64,000 nucleotides of DNA, from IMG/VR virus record IMGVR_UViG_3300032236_001859, positions 62,001 through 126,000 of that record; one strand, given 5' to 3'. Each line of letters opens with the position of its first letter. Within the stretch, counting starts at the first letter, position 1. The notes under the pieces were generated by a model. It was given only the letters and a program-made list of their open reading frames with translations. It did not search any database and was not told the origin of the DNA. Below are positions 24,129-29,030 of the stretch, piece after piece. The translations under genes were made by a program, and so were the position numbers.

Positions 24129-25730
24129 CTATCGGGAAACAATGGTTACCCCCACGTTCGCCGGCGGGCACGTAAAGAAGGTGTTCAGAGGAGAGAATCC
24201 CTTGGCGTAATCCGTGGGGATCGTGAGGAATGACGAATTGGCGAGGATCACGTTGGTGAGATCAGGTGCCAAGATGGTGGCGTTGAGGACGACGTCGGCG
24301 ACCTCCCCAGATGCGATCAAGGGGGATACCGCGGTGTAAATTGTATAGGGGCTCAGACGGGCAACCCCGAAGTTCAACGCATTGATTGCATTGGATACCG
24401 CGGTCTGGACTTCTGCGATAACCGGTGAGACCCCACCAGGTGGGATCTGGATCTCAAGGGACACCCCGACCATGCAGGGCACCCCGGCTCGAACATAGAT
24501 ATCGGTTCCAGAGGGGCGGACCCCGAGGGCGTAAGAGTAATTCCCGACGGCATCGATCGATGGCATGTAGAGGACATCGACGTCGTACTCTGCTGAGGAT
24601 CCCGCGGGGACATCCGTGGTCAGCGTGGTGTCCGTGAAGACAACGCGGAGATCAACGATGCCGCTGTAATTGAGATCTGAGGTCTTCAGTGTTGTCGGGG
24701 TAAAGACGAGGCCTTGCAGCTTCAGGGGGACCATGCTGACGGGGACGTCACCCTGCGCCCCGGGTGTATTGATTGGGCGGATGAACTGGACGCGATAGAT
24801 ACCTGCGGAGTCCGGGTTAAAGATCGTGAATGCGCGTTGGCGCCCAGTGGACGCCGCAGTAGCCGTGACTCTCAAAGTCTTCTGCACTGGAAACGCTGAG
24901 GTCTTGCACCAGATGTCTTCCTTGGAGCCCTGCGAGGTCCCAAAGACATTCCCACGATCCCGGGTCATCAGACCACTGCCGATGCCGATGACTGCGGTTT
25001 TGATTCCAGCAAACTGGGCATTCAAGGCGGCCTGGATGTGATCGGGACCCCCGAAGGTCTTCGCGGTGACACCATCCTGAGCCCTGGCCAAGAGTTCAGA
25101 TGTGGTCTCTGTATCCTGGCCACCCGTGAAGTCCGTGGCTGCCATGGCGGTTTCCATGCCATCGATGGGGGCCGTGATGGTCAACGCGGTACCCGCACTG
25201 ATGAGCCCAGCGCTACCCGATGTCGTCGCGATCACGGGAACCGTGAACTCGTATTTGCCATCGGCACGGGGGATCAGGATCTTTTGTGTTGAAGTCTCGG
25301 CGACCCCACTGCCGGCGCGGAGGACTCGAATGAAGTCAGATGTCTGATAGGTGACCCCATTGGCACCGAAGAGGTAGCCCGAGGGGATCACATAGGTTGT
25401 GTTGAGGTTGACAACGATGCGCACTGGACCCGACGCCGGGGAGGCCTGGCGTCGGGTGATGTAATAGTTTGAGATCAAGGAGTCCACTTTGGCGGCGTCG
25501 ACATCTACCAAGTTGTCAGCGATGGCCTGCAAGGAAAACGACTTGTTAAGGGCATCAAAGTTGGCGTCGTGAACCGCGGCCATCTGGGCTTCATTTTCGA
25601 CGACGAGACCAGAGATCGCGGAACCATCGGCGAGATCCAAGGTGGGATCACGTTCGATGAGCACTGCCTTCACGAACTCCTTGGCGGCCTGAAAGGTTTC
25701 AGCAGAGATCGGTGCGGTTAGGACTGTCAT
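24129..25730 (-). CDS. Baseplate J-like wedge protein
   Basis: ITRRQASPASG, GSAGLISAGT and FTGGQDTETTSELLARA are gpJ/gp6-family motifs. Confidence 0.85.
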   Translation of the reverse strand: MTVLTAPISAETFQAAKEFVKAVLIERDPTLDLADGSAISGLVVENEAQMAAVHDANFDALNKSFSLQAIADNLVDVDAAKVDSLISNYYITRRQASPASGPVRIVVNLNTTYVIPSGYLFGANGVTYQTSDFIRVLRAGSGVAETSTQKILIPRADGKYEFTVPVIATTSGSAGLISAGTALTITAPIDGMETAMAATDFTGGQDTETTSELLARAQDGVTAKTFGGPDHIQAALNAQFAGIKTAVIGIGSGLMTRDRGNVFGTSQGSKEDIWCKTSAFPVQKTLRVTATAASTGRQRAFTIFNPDSAGIYRVQFIRPINTPGAQGDVPVSMVPLKLQGLVFTPTTLKTSDLNYSGIVDLRVVFTDTTLTTDVPAGSSAEYDVDVLYMPSIDAVGNYSYALGVRPSGTDIYVRAGVPCMVGVSLEIQIPPGGVSPVIAEVQTAVSNAINALNFGVARLSPYTIYTAVSPLIASGEVADVVLNATILAPDLTNVILANSSFLTIPTDYAKGFSPLNTFFTCPPANVGVTIVSR

Positions 25731-26134
25731 GGGACTCTCTCAAGGGGGAACGTGATGACGACATCACCGTTTTGCGTCACAAGTCTGACAACCAGCTTCG
25801 TCGTGTAATCTGGGTTGACAGTGGCTGACTCGAGAACTGCACGGACGATCTGTTCATGATCTGGGTACCCGGATTGATCCCCGAGCTGCCTGACGACCTC
25901 AGATGCCGCCAGCGCGAATTGCTGACGTAGTTTAGCCGTGGTGAGCAAGCGGCCAGTGCGATACAGCCGCGGGAAATCGGTGCCGCGATCTCGGGTGGCA
26001 TTGAAGTCGGAGAAGAAGATGGAAGCAAAGCGGGTAATCAGTTTAGGTGAGTTCTCGAGAACACGCCCCGGAGATGCCCATGCCACCTGGGTAGCCGCAC
26101 CCTGTTCTCTGAAAATGGCGAGATCCGTGGTCAT
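25727..26134 (-). CDS. gp25/gpW-like baseplate protein
   Basis: 135 aa, immediately upstream of J; KLITRF...DRGTDF pattern. Confidence 0.65.
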   Translation of the reverse strand: MTTDLAIFREQGAATQVAWASPGRVLENSPKLITRFASIFFSDFNATRDRGTDFPRLYRTGRLLTTAKLRQQFALAASEVVRQLGDQSGYPDHEQIVRAVLESATVNPDYTTKLVVRLVTQNGDVVITFPLERVP

Positions 26135-26553
26135 ACCGTGGCTTCTTCAGTCTTCGGTGGGATGCCCTCGGGGGCATCGTTGTTGAGTACGAGAGTTTCG
26201 AGTTGGAGATCCCTGCGGGTGCCATCTTCGAGCTCACCCAGGAGTCTCGCAAGGGCATCGGCCCTGGACACCCTGACCACTGCTGCAGTTCTCTTCGCGG
26301 CCTCGAGGAGATGAAGCTGGGGGTAGGCTCCCAAGGGGTAGTCAATTTTGGTGCCTTGTCCAAGCACCGTATAGATCTCCCAGATCTCAGCCTGGATTCC
26401 AGCGGGATCGGGGTCCTTGCTGGAATCCAGCTCAAGTGGGGATGCAAAATCCCCGTTGTTGAGGCCTTGACGTGTGGCCTCCAAGAACTCCCGCCGCTGG
26501 GACATCCAGGCCTCGAAGTCCTTATGGATACCACGAATCTTGGGTTCAGCCAT
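26131..26553 (-). CDS. Hypothetical protein (140 aa)
   Basis: Start MAEPK at 26553 overlaps the sigma gene stop; ATGA overlap downstream. Confidence 0.65.
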   Translation of the reverse strand: MAEPKIRGIHKDFEAWMSQRREFLEATRQGLNNGDFASPLELDSSKDPDPAGIQAEIWEIYTVLGQGTKIDYPLGAYPQLHLLEAAKRTAAVVRVSRADALARLLGELEDGTRRDLQLETLVLNNDAPEGIPPKTEEATV

Positions 26554-27349
26554 GGAAAGCATCCAACCTTTCCTGGATCCTGGTGGCGCGTTGAGACACC
26601 GCACCAGGGGTGAGCTTGAGGCGTTTCGCTATGGCTCCGTTGGTGAGTTTGGGGGCTCCACGGTAACCGGTACGATACGATAGAATTACCTTATCGGTTT
26701 CATCGAGGTCATGATAAGTCGCATCAACCCATTCATCGTAGGGATCCGTGGATGATGTCGCGATCTCTGGGGTATCGTCATCATCATCACCGAGACCATC
26801 TTCGTATGCAGAAGACGAGATCCCCTTGCGCATGAGACCACGAACCTTGGTGATTCGCTTCACCGGGATCCCCGTGATCTCGGCGAGGCGTTCATCGCTG
26901 ACCTCGGTGCCGACGACATCGCCGGCTCGGGAGATCGCATCGATAAGAGCCCGGCTGTCCTTCCGCATGCGCTCCGGCATCGGTAAGGGGTCAGTGATCT
27001 TGGGACCCTCGTGCTGGAGCCTCTGGAGCTGCCGGAACACGTGGGTCTTGAGATCGACACCCACATTGGGGTTAAAGGACTTCACGGCCTCTGCAGCGAT
27101 GAGCCTGGCCCTGTGGGCGACCACGGGAGTCTGTACGGGGGCAAAGCTCGTCAGCGCCTTCTGGATCGTGGGCTGTAGGGTATTGACCACTGCTCTGAGA
27201 TTCTCAGGCCTGGGGTCTCCCTGATAAGCCGTGAAGCTCTCATTCCATGTATTTTTAGACGAAGTTGTCGGGGAACCCTTCGGGCTCTGGGGTAACGACT
27301 GTGACGGTTCCAGTCCCTTTTGCGGCGCCTTTGGGGGCTGTGCCGACAC
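26546..27349 (-). CDS. Sigma-70 family RNA polymerase sigma factor (FliA/SigF-like); start uncertain (27349 GTG, 27505 or 27538 ATG)
   Basis: Region 2 AEAVKSFNPNVGVDLKTHV, region 3 GTEVSDERLAEITG, region 4 HTH LTNGAIAKRLKLTPGAVSQ. Confidence 0.8.
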   Translation of the reverse strand: MSAQPPKAPQKGLEPSQSLPQSPKGSPTTSSKNTWNESFTAYQGDPRPENLRAVVNTLQPTIQKALTSFAPVQTPVVAHRARLIAAEAVKSFNPNVGVDLKTHVFRQLQRLQHEGPKITDPLPMPERMRKDSRALIDAISRAGDVVGTEVSDERLAEITGIPVKRITKVRGLMRKGISSSAYEDGLGDDDDDTPEIATSSTDPYDEWVDATYHDLDETDKVILSYRTGYRGAPKLTNGAIAKRLKLTPGAVSQRATRIQERLDAFHG

Positions 27350-29030
27350 TGATGAAGTTTGAACTGTATTTCGGCTTGGTTGGAGTTGATGCGATTGTGG
27401 TTGTTGGAGTGCTGGTTCCCCCGGCGACGGGGTGCTCGTCGAGTCGGCGTCCTGCGTAGGCTTCGGCCCATAGCGGATGCTGAAAGGTGATGCTTCTTTG
27501 GCCATCACTAGATCGAGTAAATCTAGTGGCCTCGACATCGGCGGCCTGATGTTGTTTCGACCTGACATACATGACCTCCAGTTGGGTACCCGCCTGCTTT
27601 GCAGCTGCATCGAGAATTAGCGTAATGCCTTCGACTGCCCCGTACATCGAGGTGCCCTCGTCGATTGGGGTACCTGCAATAGTTGGGTAAACCAACCGGA
27701 CGGGGGTACATAAACCGATATCCATCCGCAAAGGGCAGTCCACTGCAAGAAGACGTCCGACATAGGTCTGTCTTAGTGCGAGTTCTCTGGCGTATGGGTC
27801 CCCGTAAAAACGAAGGTCCCCGTCGGTGACACGCCCTATCAAGGGGCTCTTGAGCCATGCAGGGGCTGGGAGAGTCGTAAACAGCCCAACGGAGTTTCCG
27901 TTGGGGTCAATGGTATTCTTAGCCTGGATAACCCCTTTTCGGCGGAATCCACCGAGAATACTTACCGCCGAGGTATCCGCCCCGGCTTCACCAACCTGCC
28001 CATTGGGGTTATCAATAAACACGAGTCCAGCTACCACAGATGTGCTCTGCGTTACCCAGCTTGCTCTGATGATCGTGGATGGCCAAAGTGGTTTATGTAA
28101 ATCTGTGGGTGCGAATGGTGTGTACGGTACCACTCCTATCCCAGCGCCATGCTCAATTATTGAGAAAAAGAAGTCGTCTGCCAAGGCCTGTGACTTTGAT
28201 AGCATGCTTTGCTGCACAAGGTCTTTGTGGAACTCTGCGCTTAAATAGCCGTGAACGACTTCAGCCATGGTCTCGTTAAAAATACCACCTTTTAGACTGC
28301 CCTGTATCAGATCTAATGCGTTTTTCGCCGCAACTGTCCCAGGCACTGCCAAATAACTTTGAGCGGCCTCGGCAGCTGCGTCATTCCCCCCGTCTGCGAG
28401 AAAACGTACATACGCGTTCTGCAGCCCAAACTTATCCTGGGCCTGGTGATTCAATACAAATGAAAACGCGTCTGTTATACCTGCCCAGAAATCACGTTGG
28501 AATATCTCAAAATCAATAGACCCTTCATACGAGTTATTGGTTGTTTCCACTAACTCGTCTGTCCGCAGGTACGCGGACGTAGTGTTTGAAAAATGAAGGG
28601 CTCCCGTGGCCAGGTATAGTAAGCGTGAAACGATCACAACTCGTAAGTTGAACTTACCGTTGGCGAGATCACTGGGGCCTCCATCATCGACTACCCCAGT
28701 TATGAGATCATGGTCCCCTGCTTTTAGCAGGAGGTCAGATGACCCCTTGGGTCCGCGCAGTGAATAAACATCTGAATCGAAACGAATGACTACTGTTGCC
28801 GGGGTTCCCTTGACGAACACAAAGTCCGCTGGGATTGCCTTGGTGCCCTTTGGGTTTCTCGCATTAACGCCTACTGCGAGGTCAACCACCGCCTTGGTCT
28901 CAATACGTGAGTATCGAACCACTATTTTCACAGCAGCGTATGACTTACCATCAATCGTCACCCATGCTGAGAATGACGTGGGTACAGTCGGGAGATTCCC
29001 CTGCCGCATGTACTGGGTTAGGTCGGTCAC
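27255..29030 (-). CDS. Baseplate hub-like tail protein (591 aa)
   Basis: Position between tape measure and wedge genes; beta-rich ends of gpD/gp27 type. Confidence 0.55.
   Translation of the reverse strand: MTDLTQYMRQGNLPTVPTSFSAWVTIDGKSYAAVKIVVRYSRIETKAVVDLAVGVNARNPKGTKAIPADFVFVKGTPATVVIRFDSDVYSLRGPKGSSDLLLKAGDHDLITGVVDDGGPSDLANGKFNLRVVIVSRLLYLATGALHFSNTTSAYLRTDELVETTNNSYEGSIDFEIFQRDFWAGITDAFSFVLNHQAQDKFGLQNAYVRFLADGGNDAAAEAAQSYLAVPGTVAAKNALDLIQGSLKGGIFNETMAEVVHGYLSAEFHKDLVQQSMLSKSQALADDFFFSIIEHGAGIGVVPYTPFAPTDLHKPLWPSTIIRASWVTQSTSVVAGLVFIDNPNGQVGEAGADTSAVSILGGFRRKGVIQAKNTIDPNGNSVGLFTTLPAPAWLKSPLIGRVTDGDLRFYGDPYARELALRQTYVGRLLAVDCPLRMDIGLCTPVRLVYPTIAGTPIDEGTSMYGAVEGITLILDAAAKQAGTQLEVMYVRSKQHQAADVEATRFTRSSDGQRSITFQHPLWAEAYAGRRLDEHPVAGGTSTPTTTIASTPTKPKYSSNFISVGTAPKGAAKGTGTVTVVTPEPEGFPDNFV

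What the first reader, a model, noticed from the sequence alone, without database searches (positions are those of the whole stretch)
26546..27538. Sigma factor embedded in the baseplate operon and overlapping the hub gene
Seen: a complete region 2-3-4 sigma factor between the hub and gp25/J genes. There is no in-frame start between the hub stop (27255) and the first conserved-looking helix, so it must overlap the hub gene by 95-284 nt, or be reached by a +1 shift at GTC-TAA-AAA. The longer N-terminus reads MAKEAS (a KxA motif) followed by a P/S/Q linker. Inference: a late-expressed, possibly virion-packaged sigma delivered at infection to fire the TATGAC early cassettes.
Basis: partly seen in the sequence, partly recalled or inferred. 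Interest (0 to 1): 0.62.

Follow-up and report, generated by a model that had tools for sequence, protein, structure and literature searches.

The report
Sigma factor gene overlapping baseplate hub
A large phage that carries its own RNA polymerase keeps its only sigma factor gene inside the tail-baseplate operon. The gene starts about 314 bases inside the preceding hub gene in another reading frame, and both frames appear to be translated.

Summary
Window 26546-27610 (-) holds a sigma-70-family gene with domains 2, 3 and 4, lying between a Mu gp44/T4 gp27-type baseplate hub (27255-29030) and a Baseplate_J gene.

No start codon lies between the hub stop and the first sigma helix, so the gene must begin inside the hub, in the +1 frame. 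About 140 relatives keep the order hub, sigma, ~140-aa gene, ~135-aa gene, J.

Independent assemblies from several studies show the same frame offset, so it is not an assembly error.

The best-supported start is ATG 27568, giving 340 aa and a 314-nt overlap:
- It has the strongest Shine-Dalgarno site in the region.
- It sits in a TAT-G of the hub motif YVRS that is kept in all long-overlap lineages checked.
- It is followed by a sigma-frame motif (P-DLLD-x-V) conserved through synonymous changes that alter the hub frame.

A +1 frameshift at GTC-TAA-AAA is not supported.

The 216-kb phage also encodes a bacterial-type RNA polymerase (beta fused to part of beta') and no other sigma. A fold model places sigma domain 2 on the phage beta' clamp helices.

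Virion packaging is plausible. A distant cultured relative, Salmonella phage Arash, has sigma, beta and beta' in its particle proteome. It is untested here, and so is the TATGAC link.

The parts
26546..27568 (-). Sigma factor gene, best-supported reading: 340 aa plus stop, starting at ATG 27568-27566
   Evidence: ORF. Start chosen from the SD, cross-lineage conservation and the downstream conserved motif.
27575..27579 (-). Shine-Dalgarno GGAGG, 6 nt upstream of ATG 27568, built from hub codons Leu-Glu-Val
   Evidence: Duplex with the anti-SD is -10.0 kcal/mol, the minimum over all hub positions tested; every other candidate start is -2.7 or weaker. GGAGG or GGAGA is kept in 7 of 7 lineages of the close subclade.
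27255..27568 (-). 314-nt out-of-frame overlap: hub residues 488-591 and sigma residues 1-104 (sigma frame = hub frame +1)
   Evidence: The frame is kept open in 11 lineages despite indels.
27506..27529 (-). Sigma-frame N-terminal motif P-L-D-L-L-D-L-V (residues 14-21), a short predicted helix
   Evidence: D-L-L-D is invariant in 7 lineages, using 5 and 4 different Leu codons. The same bases read as variable residues in the hub frame. AF2 predicts a helix at residues 17-23. A similar motif, PSIL(G/D)DV, lies 9-26 residues from the Met in non-overlapping relatives.
27257..27490 (-). Disordered Pro/Ser/Thr/Gln-rich linker of sigma (residues 27-104). In the hub frame it covers the conserved HPLW...RLDE block and then a disordered tail.
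   Evidence: AF2 pLDDT about 45-50. The hub model has pLDDT about 35 from residue 539. Linker length varies from 25 to 90 aa among relatives.
26984..27250 (-). Sigma domain 2 (residues about 107-195)
   Evidence: AF2 helices 107-192 with pLDDT above 90. PDB profile and fold matches. Predicted contacts with the phage beta' clamp helices.
26795..26974 (-). Sigma domain 3 (residues about 199-258), followed by an acidic disordered loop (259-275)
   Evidence: (Sigma70_r3, sub-threshold).
26561..26743 (-). Sigma domain 4 with helix-turn-helix (residues about 276-336)
   Evidence: (HTH and Sigma70_r4, sub-threshold).
27255..29030 (-). Baseplate central hub gene, 591 aa
   Evidence: AF2 pTM 0.80. Foldseek matches MuSo2 43-kDa tail protein, Mu gp44, T4 gp27 and VgrG at E 1e-11 to 1e-7. 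No Pfam or PHROG hit.
26131..26553 (-). Conserved 140-aa gene directly after sigma; its ATG overlaps the sigma stop by 8 nt; function unknown
   Evidence: No family or atlas hit.
24129..26134 (-). Downstream baseplate genes: a 135-aa gene in the gp25/W position (unconfirmed) and Baseplate_J (533 aa)
   Evidence: PF04865 E 7e-18 and PHROG 6. The 135-aa protein has no hit.
27240..27320 (-). Hypervariable patch at the hub stop and the end of the sigma linker; net indels stay a multiple of 3

Best explanation
This is a functional sigma-70-family gene with domains 2, 3 and 4 and no region 1.1. It is the only recognisable sigma of a 216-kb phage that encodes its own bacterial-type RNA polymerase.

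It is transcribed as part of the baseplate operon. It is translated from an internal start, ATG 27568 with a GGAGG Shine-Dalgarno site, that lies 314 nt inside the hub gene in the +1 frame. The same DNA therefore encodes the last 104 residues of the hub and the first 104 residues of sigma. Those sigma residues are a short conserved acidic-hydrophobic motif followed by a long disordered linker.

Shown here:
- the gene is real and under purifying selection;
- the frame offset is genuine;
- both frames carry their own constrained blocks;
- the start context is conserved.

Inferred:
- the sigma serves the phage-encoded beta/beta' enzyme rather than, or besides, host core;
- being made together with baseplate proteins, it is loaded into particles for the next infection, with the N-terminal motif as a possible tether. 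I put packaging at about 0.4.
For: Sigma identity.

Purifying selection on the core: 19 of 22 differences from the closest relative fall on sigma third codon positions.

No start after the hub stop, and conserved residues upstream of GTG 27190.

Same +1 offset in independent assemblies from other samples and studies.

Start site:
- SD of -10.0 kcal/mol only at ATG 27568.
- The hub Tyr codon is TAT followed by G in 10 of the 11 long-overlap lineages and TAC or TTC in 5 of 5 adjacent-gene lineages. The eleventh long-overlap lineage (L013/L069) has TAC and a GTG two codons on.
- In L007, L067, L068 and L070 a stop just upstream makes this the first possible ATG.

Dual coding:
- D-L-L-D is invariant with many synonymous Leu and Asp codons while the hub frame changes. 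The adjacent hub motif HPLW...RLDE is conserved with hub-synonymous changes.
- Hub codon identity at conserved residues is 0.55 in the overlap against 0.40 upstream.
- An open frame of this length has P of about 0.004.

Operon context: about 140 loci keep hub, then sigma, then about 140 aa, then about 135 aa, then J. There are no more promoter- or terminator-like sites than chance.

Phage polymerase:
- Rpb2_6, Rpb1_1/2 and Rpb1_5 domains are present.
- 4 of 5 related complete contigs also have Rpb2_6.
- There is a single sigma in the genome.
- Complex model: ipSAE 0.76 against a best control of 0.00. That mark was reached by 51 of 78 solved complexes and 2 of 108 mismatched pairs. The runs agree in at least 57% of contacts, and the partner pLDDT is at least 74. 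Contacts run from beta' 1675-1742 to sigma 121-159 and 190-201.

Arash particle proteome: sigma Gp10 with 100% coverage and 24 unique peptides, alongside phage beta and beta' (PMC10585845).
Against: No protein-level or ribosome data exist for any member, so the start is inferred.

ATG 27538 also precedes the conserved motif and cannot be excluded for this genome.

The complex model may pass from memory of solved sigma-beta' complexes, and it does not discriminate phage core from host core.

The Arash list of 116 'particle' proteins includes many enzymes, so contamination is likely. Arash Gp10 is only about 27% identical over about 55% of the query.

The low divergence of 27320-27490 between the two closest genomes could partly reflect a recombination boundary rather than dual constraint.

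The likeness of P-DLLD-x-V to PSIL(G/D)DV is a resemblance, not demonstrated homology.

Some relatives have a 3-4-residue leader with no motif at all.
Confidence: 0.62

Rival explanations
1. A programmed +1 ribosomal frameshift in the hub gene, at GTC-TAA-AAA or elsewhere in the overlap, makes a hub-sigma fusion protein. Sigma has no start of its own.
For: The sigma frame is +1 to the hub in every overlapping lineage, and no start follows the hub stop. A fusion would put sigma physically on the baseplate.
Against: The hub stop lies at different positions and in unrelated sequence in relatives (TAA here, TGA 15 nt further on in the closest relative), with no re-pairing potential and no conserved slippery site. 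A conserved ATG with a strong SD lies upstream. In most of the family sigma is a separate gene with its own ATG next to the hub stop. The conserved motif sits 14-20 residues from the proposed Met, as in free-standing relatives.
Confidence: 0.05
2. The gene is as described, but translation starts at a later in-frame codon: ATG 27538, ATG 27505 or GTG 27349.
For: These codons exist in frame. ATG 27538 still precedes the conserved motif and is kept in the three closest lineages.
Against: None has an SD (-2.5, +0.3 and +0.9 kcal/mol). GTG 27349 is GCG in the closest relative. ATG 27538 and 27505 are absent in L007, L067, L068 and L008. Starts at 27505 or 27349 would leave the selected D-L-L-D block untranslated.
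Confidence: 0.18
3. It is an ordinary phage late or middle sigma that redirects host core RNA polymerase (like SPO1 gp28/gp34 or T4 gp55 in role). It is not packaged, and its place in the baseplate operon only sets its timing.
For: Phage sigmas that use host core are the known rule. A recent review states that jumbo-phage multisubunit polymerases lack sigma homologues and that sigma homologues occur in polymerase-less jumbo phages (PMC13282480). The sigma profile is closest to bacterial group 1/2 sigmas.
Against: The genome and 4 of 5 related complete contigs encode their own beta/beta'. It is the only sigma available for that enzyme. The model places it on the phage beta' clamp helices. A sigma needed to switch on late genes would not be expected inside a late structural operon in about 140 genomes. 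The Arash homologue is abundant in particle preparations.
Confidence: 0.25
4. Artefact: an assembly indel near 27250 splits one gene, or sigma is a 5'-truncated pseudogene.
For: The junction 27240-27320 is locally very divergent and indel-rich.
Against: Contigs from four runs of four studies span the site, and their indels sum to a multiple of 3. Seven further assemblies keep the offset. Substitutions in the sigma core are almost all synonymous.
Confidence: 0.01

Closest known systems
Salmonella phage Arash Gp10 ('RNA polymerase sigma factor RpoS'), OQ632216, PMC10585845
   Same: A distant homologue (about 27% identity; E 7e-6 to the window, 7e-12 to a family member). It lies in the same place: after the hub-like lysozyme protein and before a small protein and the baseplate genes. 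The phage also encodes beta and beta'. Sigma, beta and beta' were all detected in particle preparations.
   Different: The gene does not overlap its upstream neighbour. The paper gives no analysis of the sigma beyond its annotation. The Arash hub region is organised differently (a 1165-aa lysozyme-bearing protein plus a 96-aa protein).
mReC lineage of Caudovirales encoding multisubunit RNA polymerase (Weinheimer and Aylward 2020, PMC7481178)
   Same: Large uncultured tailed phages of about 100-230 kb from water, soil and engineered habitats that encode beta and beta' homologues, as this genome does.
   Different: The paper never mentions a sigma factor (0 occurrences). Membership of this genome in that clade was not tested by phylogeny here.
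Virion and non-virion RNA polymerases of phiKZ-like and AR9 phages, with gp68/gp226 as specificity subunits; N4 virion RNAP
   Same: The concept of a phage-encoded polymerase whose parts are made late, packed into particles and injected to transcribe early genes, with a dedicated promoter-specificity subunit.
   Different: Those enzymes have no sequence-recognisable sigma-70 homologue (PMC13282480). Here the factor is a classical domain 2-3-4 sigma. Packaging is not shown here.
T4 gp55, SPO1 gp28/gp33-34 and other phage sigmas acting on host core
   Same: A phage-encoded sigma-70-family protein that gives promoter specificity for phage genes.
   Different: T4 gp55 has only a domain-2-like part, whereas this protein has domains 2, 3 and 4. 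Those phages have no polymerase of their own, and their sigma genes are not in the baseplate module and do not overlap a structural gene (from established knowledge, not tested here).
Long out-of-frame overlapping genes (overprinting) in phages, e.g. phiX174 and lambda Rz/Rz1
   Same: Two proteins are read from one stretch of DNA in different frames. The downstream gene starts at an internal SD plus ATG, and each frame has its own constrained patches.
   Different: Here a transcription factor overlaps a virion structural protein by 95-356 nt. The overlap is conserved over a clade down to about 38% sigma identity, while sister lineages keep the two genes merely adjacent.

Membership tests
Sigma-70 family | Domain 2 (regions 2.1-2.4) homologous to bacterial sigmas | tested here: met
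   The family profile hits SigA/SigB/RpoD/RpoS from profile position 69 at E 1e-14 to 1e-10. AF2 helices 107-192 have pLDDT above 90. Foldseek prob 1.00 to sigma chains.
Sigma-70 family | Domains 3 and 4 (helix-turn-helix for the -35 element) | tested here: met
   Profile and fold alignments extend over about 220-268 columns including domains 3 and 4. PHROG 351 covers residues 174-351. An HTH is modelled at residues 310-336.
Sigma-70 family | Single sequence passes Pfam gathering thresholds for Sigma70_r2/r3/r4 | tested here: not met
   r3 scores 14.7 bits against a cut-off of 25.3, r4 scores 14.0 against 24.1, and r2 is not detected. Relatives carry PF04539. The member is divergent, and identity rests on profile and fold evidence.
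Sigma-70 family | Binds the beta' clamp helices of a multisubunit RNAP core | tested here: inconclusive
   Model only: ipSAE 0.76 against a best control of 0.00, with the canonical interface on the phage beta' part. The pass may reflect memory of solved complexes. No biochemical test.
Sigma-70 family | Confers promoter-specific initiation | not testable with these tools
   No transcript or TSS data. No RNA run holds the locus.
Programmed +1 ribosomal frameshift (prfB-type) | A conserved shift-prone site at a fixed place, usually at a poor stop or rare codon with re-pairing in +1 | tested here: not met
   The position and sequence of the hub stop differ between relatives, and neither GTC-TAA nor GCA-TGA can re-pair.
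Programmed +1 ribosomal frameshift (prfB-type) | The downstream frame lacks its own initiation signal | tested here: not met
   A strong SD plus a conserved ATG sits at 27568.
Dual-coding overlapping gene pair | Both frames stay open across diverged relatives despite indels | tested here: met
   11 lineages, overlaps of 95-356 nt, always +1. P(open) is 0.004-0.05 for the four longest.
Dual-coding overlapping gene pair | Purifying selection detectable in each frame | tested here: met
   Sigma frame: D-L-L-D is invariant with synonymous codon turnover. Hub frame: HPLW...RLDE is conserved with hub-synonymous changes. Hub synonymous variation is reduced in the overlap, 0.55 against 0.40 codon identity. 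The sample is small and the pairs are not independent.
Virion-packaged transcription machinery (phiKZ vRNAP / N4 vRNAP kind) | The protein is present in purified particles and injected | not testable with these tools
   Literature only, and for a distant homologue: Arash Gp10, 24 unique peptides, in a list of 116 proteins (PMC10585845).
Virion-packaged transcription machinery (phiKZ vRNAP / N4 vRNAP kind) | Gene expressed with late or structural genes | tested here: inconclusive
   Same strand, overlapping or adjacent starts and stops, no excess of promoter- or terminator-like sites. No expression data.
T4 gp55-type late sigma | Minimal sigma with a domain-2-like part only | tested here: not met
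   Domains 3 and 4 are present.

The most novel reading that the evidence does not exclude
The phage carries a complete bacterial-type transcription initiation kit. This is a beta/beta' enzyme plus a classical sigma-70-family factor, made with the baseplate, loaded into the particle through the conserved N-terminal motif and long flexible linker, and injected to start the phage's own transcription.

This would be the first classical sigma shown to be a virion component. Its N-terminal tether is encoded by overprinting on the hub gene.
Probability: 0.3. Interest if true: 0.8.

Novelty: new variant of a known kind. Interest (0 to 1): 0.62.

Why it matters
Current reviews state that phage multisubunit RNA polymerases work without sigma homologues, and that phage sigma homologues belong to phages that borrow the host enzyme (PMC13282480). 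This widespread group of large phages appears to have both. It keeps the sigma gene inside the baseplate module, which suggests how such phages could become independent of host transcription from the first minute of infection.

The overlap is also a clean natural example of a regulatory protein overprinted on a structural gene, with interleaved constraint in the two frames. It also shows a practical annotation problem. Gene callers either truncate this sigma at an internal GTG (214 aa, as in one database entry) or call starts inconsistently.

A single silent change in the hub (TAT to TAC) would test the start directly in a cultured relative.

Tried and rejected
- **DNA search against phage records:** a blastn of the 6-kb region found nothing.
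- **Single-sequence Pfam:** only sub-threshold sigma hits.
- **Downstream 140-aa gene:** Pfam, PHROGs and the atlas search gave nothing.
- **'gp25' label:** it could not be confirmed for the 135-aa protein in the window or in five relatives.
- **Hub sequence profile against the PDB:** nothing. Only the fold search identified the hub.
- **RNA data:** no RNA run holds the locus, and all holders are kept as contigs. Expression, transcript ends and read-level variants could therefore not be examined.
- **TATGAC:** the hexamer is not enriched in the genome (26 and 49 occurrences against about 50 expected per strand). Only four hairpin/T-run/TATGAC cassettes exist. No link to the sigma could be tested.
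- **Low divergence of 27320-27490:** I considered it as proof of dual coding and rejected it as proof. A mosaic boundary between the two closest genomes lies at the same place. The claim rests instead on comparisons with more distant lineages.
- **Rejected outright:** GTG 27190 as the start, a +1 frameshift, and an assembly error (see the rival explanations).
- **Tree:** the careful tree search did not finish, so only the quick tree is cited.
Full report
**What is there.** On the - strand an open frame runs from 27610 to 26546. The preceding ORF, 27255-29030, ends at TAA 27257-27255 within GTC-TAA-AAA, and the sigma frame is +1 relative to it. The window is bases 62001-126000 of a 216,043-bp virus record with direct terminal repeats.

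**Is it a sigma factor?**
- A single-sequence Pfam scan gives only sub-threshold Sigma70_r3, Sigma70_r4 and HTH hits. PHROG 351 (RNA polymerase sigma factor) matches at E 1.5e-8.
- A profile of 67 family members hits SigA, SigB, RpoD and RpoS chains of the PDB at E 1e-14 to 1e-10 over profile positions 69-230.
- The AF2 model of the 340-aa reading is confident (pLDDT above 90) from residue 107 to the end, apart from an acidic loop at 259-275.
- Its best Foldseek matches are all sigma-70-family chains, aligned over about 220-268 columns.
- It therefore has domains 2, 3 and 4 and no region 1.1.
- Between the window and its closest relative, 19 of 22 substitutions in the core fall on sigma third codon positions. 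The gene is under purifying selection.

**Is the neighbour a hub?** Sequence methods are silent. The AF2 model (pTM 0.80) matches the MuSo2 43-kDa tail protein, Mu gp44, T4 gp27 and VgrG at E 1e-11 to 1e-7. Baseplate_J is confirmed downstream (PF04865, E 7e-18). The 'gp25' label of the 135-aa gene is not confirmed.

**The start problem.**
- After the hub stop, the only in-frame ATG/GTG/TTG is GTG 27190.
- It lies in the middle of helix 2 of domain 2 (V127).
- The residues upstream of it are conserved in relatives, with synonymous changes.
- Relatives with ordinary starts begin just before the first helix.
- A database entry of 214 aa that starts at this GTG is therefore a mis-call.

**Not an artefact.**
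- Contigs from four runs of four studies span the junction. The presumed source is identical.
- The other three differ by indels that sum to a multiple of three.
- Seven further assemblies (L002, L004-6, L007, L008, L067, L068, L070) keep the same +1 offset.

**Family and synteny.**
- Fifteen protein homologues were found, then about 140 loci in viral and metagenome contigs, many of 100-226 kb.
- Where context was read, the order is a hub of 520-620 aa, then sigma, then a gene of about 140 aa, then one of about 135 aa, then J.
- In most loci the hub stop and the sigma ATG are adjacent or overlap by 4 nt, with a sigma leader of about 30 aa.
- In one part of the tree the hub stop lies inside sigma, always with sigma in frame +1. 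This covers the window, L002, L004, L008, L007, L067, L068, L070, L013, L078 and L080, at 38-100% sigma identity.
- On a quick tree these lineages cluster (0 of 500 label shuffles as low). At least 2-4 changes of state are needed, so one gain with a loss, or several gains, are both possible.

**Where translation starts.** Several observations point to ATG 27568.
- *Shine-Dalgarno site.* It has a GGAGG six bases upstream. The duplex energy with a generic anti-SD is -10.0 kcal/mol, the minimum over all hub positions tested. Every other candidate is -2.7 or weaker. SD cores precede 44% of long-ORF starts in this genome against 10% of internal positions, so the phage uses SD-led initiation.
- *Codon choice.* The ATG is made from the Tyr codon and the next base of the hub motif YVRS. 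That codon is TAT followed by G in 10 of the 11 long-overlap lineages, and TAC or TTC in 5 of 5 lineages with adjacent genes. The eleventh long-overlap lineage has TAC and uses a GTG two codons on.
- *First possible ATG.* In L007, L067, L068 and L070 a stop codon lies just upstream in the sigma frame, so this is the first possible ATG.
- *Later candidates are not conserved.* GTG 27349 is GCG in the closest relative. ATG 27538 and ATG 27505 are missing in several lineages.
- *Residual doubt.* ATG 27538 cannot be excluded for this genome.

**Both frames are read.**
- Downstream of the ATG, the sigma frame carries P-x-D-L-L-D-x-V. Across seven lineages D-L-L-D is invariant, while the two Leu positions use five and four different codons and Asp alternates between GAT and GAC.
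- The same bases read in the hub frame give RFTR, RSTG, GLAG, GPFG, GPIG and GPLG. That is purifying selection on the sigma frame.
- Immediately after it, the hub motif HPLW...Y.G.RLDE is conserved with hub-synonymous changes. The sigma frame there simply reads the shifted codons: the 'YGP' and 'DSTS' strings are hitch-hikers.
- Hub codon identity at conserved residues is 0.55 in the overlap against 0.40 upstream, and at or above the upstream value in 33 of 36 pairs. The pairs are not independent.
- The +1 frame elsewhere in the hub has 27 stops in 532 codons, so 104 open codons have P of about 0.004. The other long overlaps give 0.006-0.05.
- After RLDE the hub tail varies from 0 to about 80 residues among relatives and is modelled as disordered. 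The sigma linker over the same DNA is also disordered and varies from 25 to 90 residues.
- The closest relative and one run carry a 27-nt tandem duplication there.

**The N-terminal motif.** In non-overlapping relatives, a motif of the type PSIL(G/D)DV..PF lies 9-26 residues from the Met. A strict pattern is present in 25 of 61 leaders, against 1.4 expected from shuffles. The subclade's P-DLLD-x-V sits 14-20 residues from the proposed Met and forms the only predicted helix of the extension. I read this as the same kind of short linear motif. That is a resemblance, not proven homology, and some relatives with 3-4-residue leaders lack it.

**Frameshift rejected.** The place and sequence of the hub stop differ between relatives. 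Neither GTC-TAA nor GCA-TGA offers +1 re-pairing. A conserved initiation signal exists. In most of the family sigma is a free-standing gene.

**Which polymerase?**
- The genome encodes a 1975-aa protein with Rpb2_3 and Rpb2_6 (beta), interrupted by an intein with a LAGLIDADG domain and followed by Rpb1_1 and Rpb1_2 (the N-terminal part of beta').
- It also encodes a 634-aa protein with Rpb1_5.
- Four of five complete related contigs also carry Rpb2_6.
- No second sigma is detectable in the genome.
- A complex model of sigma 105-340 with residues 1450-1975 of the fused protein scores ipSAE 0.76 against a best control of 0.00.
- That mark was reached by 51 of 78 solved complexes and 2 of 108 mismatched pairs. 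The runs agree in at least 57% of contacts, and the partner pLDDT is at least 74.
- Contacts join beta' 1675-1742 to sigma 121-159 and 190-201, the canonical domain-2/clamp-helix interface.
- This shows likeness to known holoenzymes, not binding, and it does not exclude host core.

**Packaging and timing.**
- The gene has no more promoter- or terminator-like sites around it than chance, and it is embedded among overlapping structural genes.
- The only experimental hint comes from Salmonella phage Arash, a distant homologue in the same gene neighbourhood.
- Arash Gp10 sigma was found in particle preparations with 100% coverage and 24 unique peptides, together with phage beta and beta' as top hits. 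The list holds 116 proteins, including many enzymes (PMC10585845).
- The paper that defined RNAP-encoding Caudovirales never mentions sigma (PMC7481178).
- A 2026 review states that jumbo-phage polymerases lack sigma homologues (PMC13282480).
- I put packaging at about 0.4.

**TATGAC.** The hexamer is not enriched. Four hairpin/T-run/TATGAC cassettes lie at window 305, 4164, 6751 and 7796 on the - strand. Three of them lie 84-108 nt upstream of small ORFs; for the one at 305 no called ORF lies within about 1.1 kb. Nothing ties them to this sigma.

**Verdict.** The feature is a new variant of known kinds: a phage sigma, an overprinted gene pair, and possibly virion transcription machinery.

Noticed in passing
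G000:C1:145031-150958 (-), outside the window; locus L150:5031-10958: The phage RNA polymerase beta homologue is fused to the N-terminal part of beta'. It is interrupted by an intein with a LAGLIDADG homing-endonuclease domain (residues about 616-1032). The rest of beta' (Rpb1_5) is a separate 634-aa gene at 140137-142041.
   Followed up: partly
window 27240-27500 and flanks; L002: There is a mosaic boundary between this genome and its closest relative. The hub and the genes upstream of it are about 80% identical in protein, with saturated synonymous sites. Sigma and the downstream baseplate genes are 97-100% identical.
   Followed up: partly
window 27240-27320: An 80-nt patch at the hub stop and the end of the sigma linker is about 40% divergent and indel-rich between otherwise near-identical genomes. 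Net indels stay a multiple of 3 in three independent contigs.
   Followed up: partly
window about 27353: A 27-nt tandem duplication is present in the closest relative and in one lake-water run, and absent here. It lengthens both the hub tail and the sigma linker by nine residues.
   Followed up: yes
window 305, 4164, 6751, 7796 (- strand): There are four cassettes of a GC-rich hairpin, a T-run and TATGAC. Three lie 84-108 nt upstream of small ORFs; for the one at 305 the nearest called ORF is about 1.1 kb away. They look like terminator-promoter units. The hexamer alone is not enriched genome-wide.
   Followed up: partly
window 26131-26553 (-): A conserved 140-aa helical protein always follows sigma, with its ATG overlapping the sigma stop by 8 nt. 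No family, PHROG or atlas hit was found. Its Arash counterpart, Gp011, was reported in particles. It could be a baseplate part or a sigma partner or anti-sigma.
   Followed up: partly
window 25727-26134 (-): The 135-aa gene in the gp25/W position gives no Pfam or PHROG hit, here or in five relatives. The gp25 label rests on position only.
   Followed up: partly
protein P0001 (214 aa) and other database entries: Gene callers treat this sigma inconsistently. Entries start at the internal GTG (truncating domain 2), at the YVRS-embedded ATG (295 and 334 aa), or at proximal starts (228 and 244 aa).
   Followed up: yes
L004:1181-1186 and L008 about 4001: Two lineages with the long open overlap also have a proximal start just before the first sigma helix; in L004 it follows a GGAGGAG, while no SD was examined for L008. 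They may make both a long and a short sigma form.
   Followed up: no
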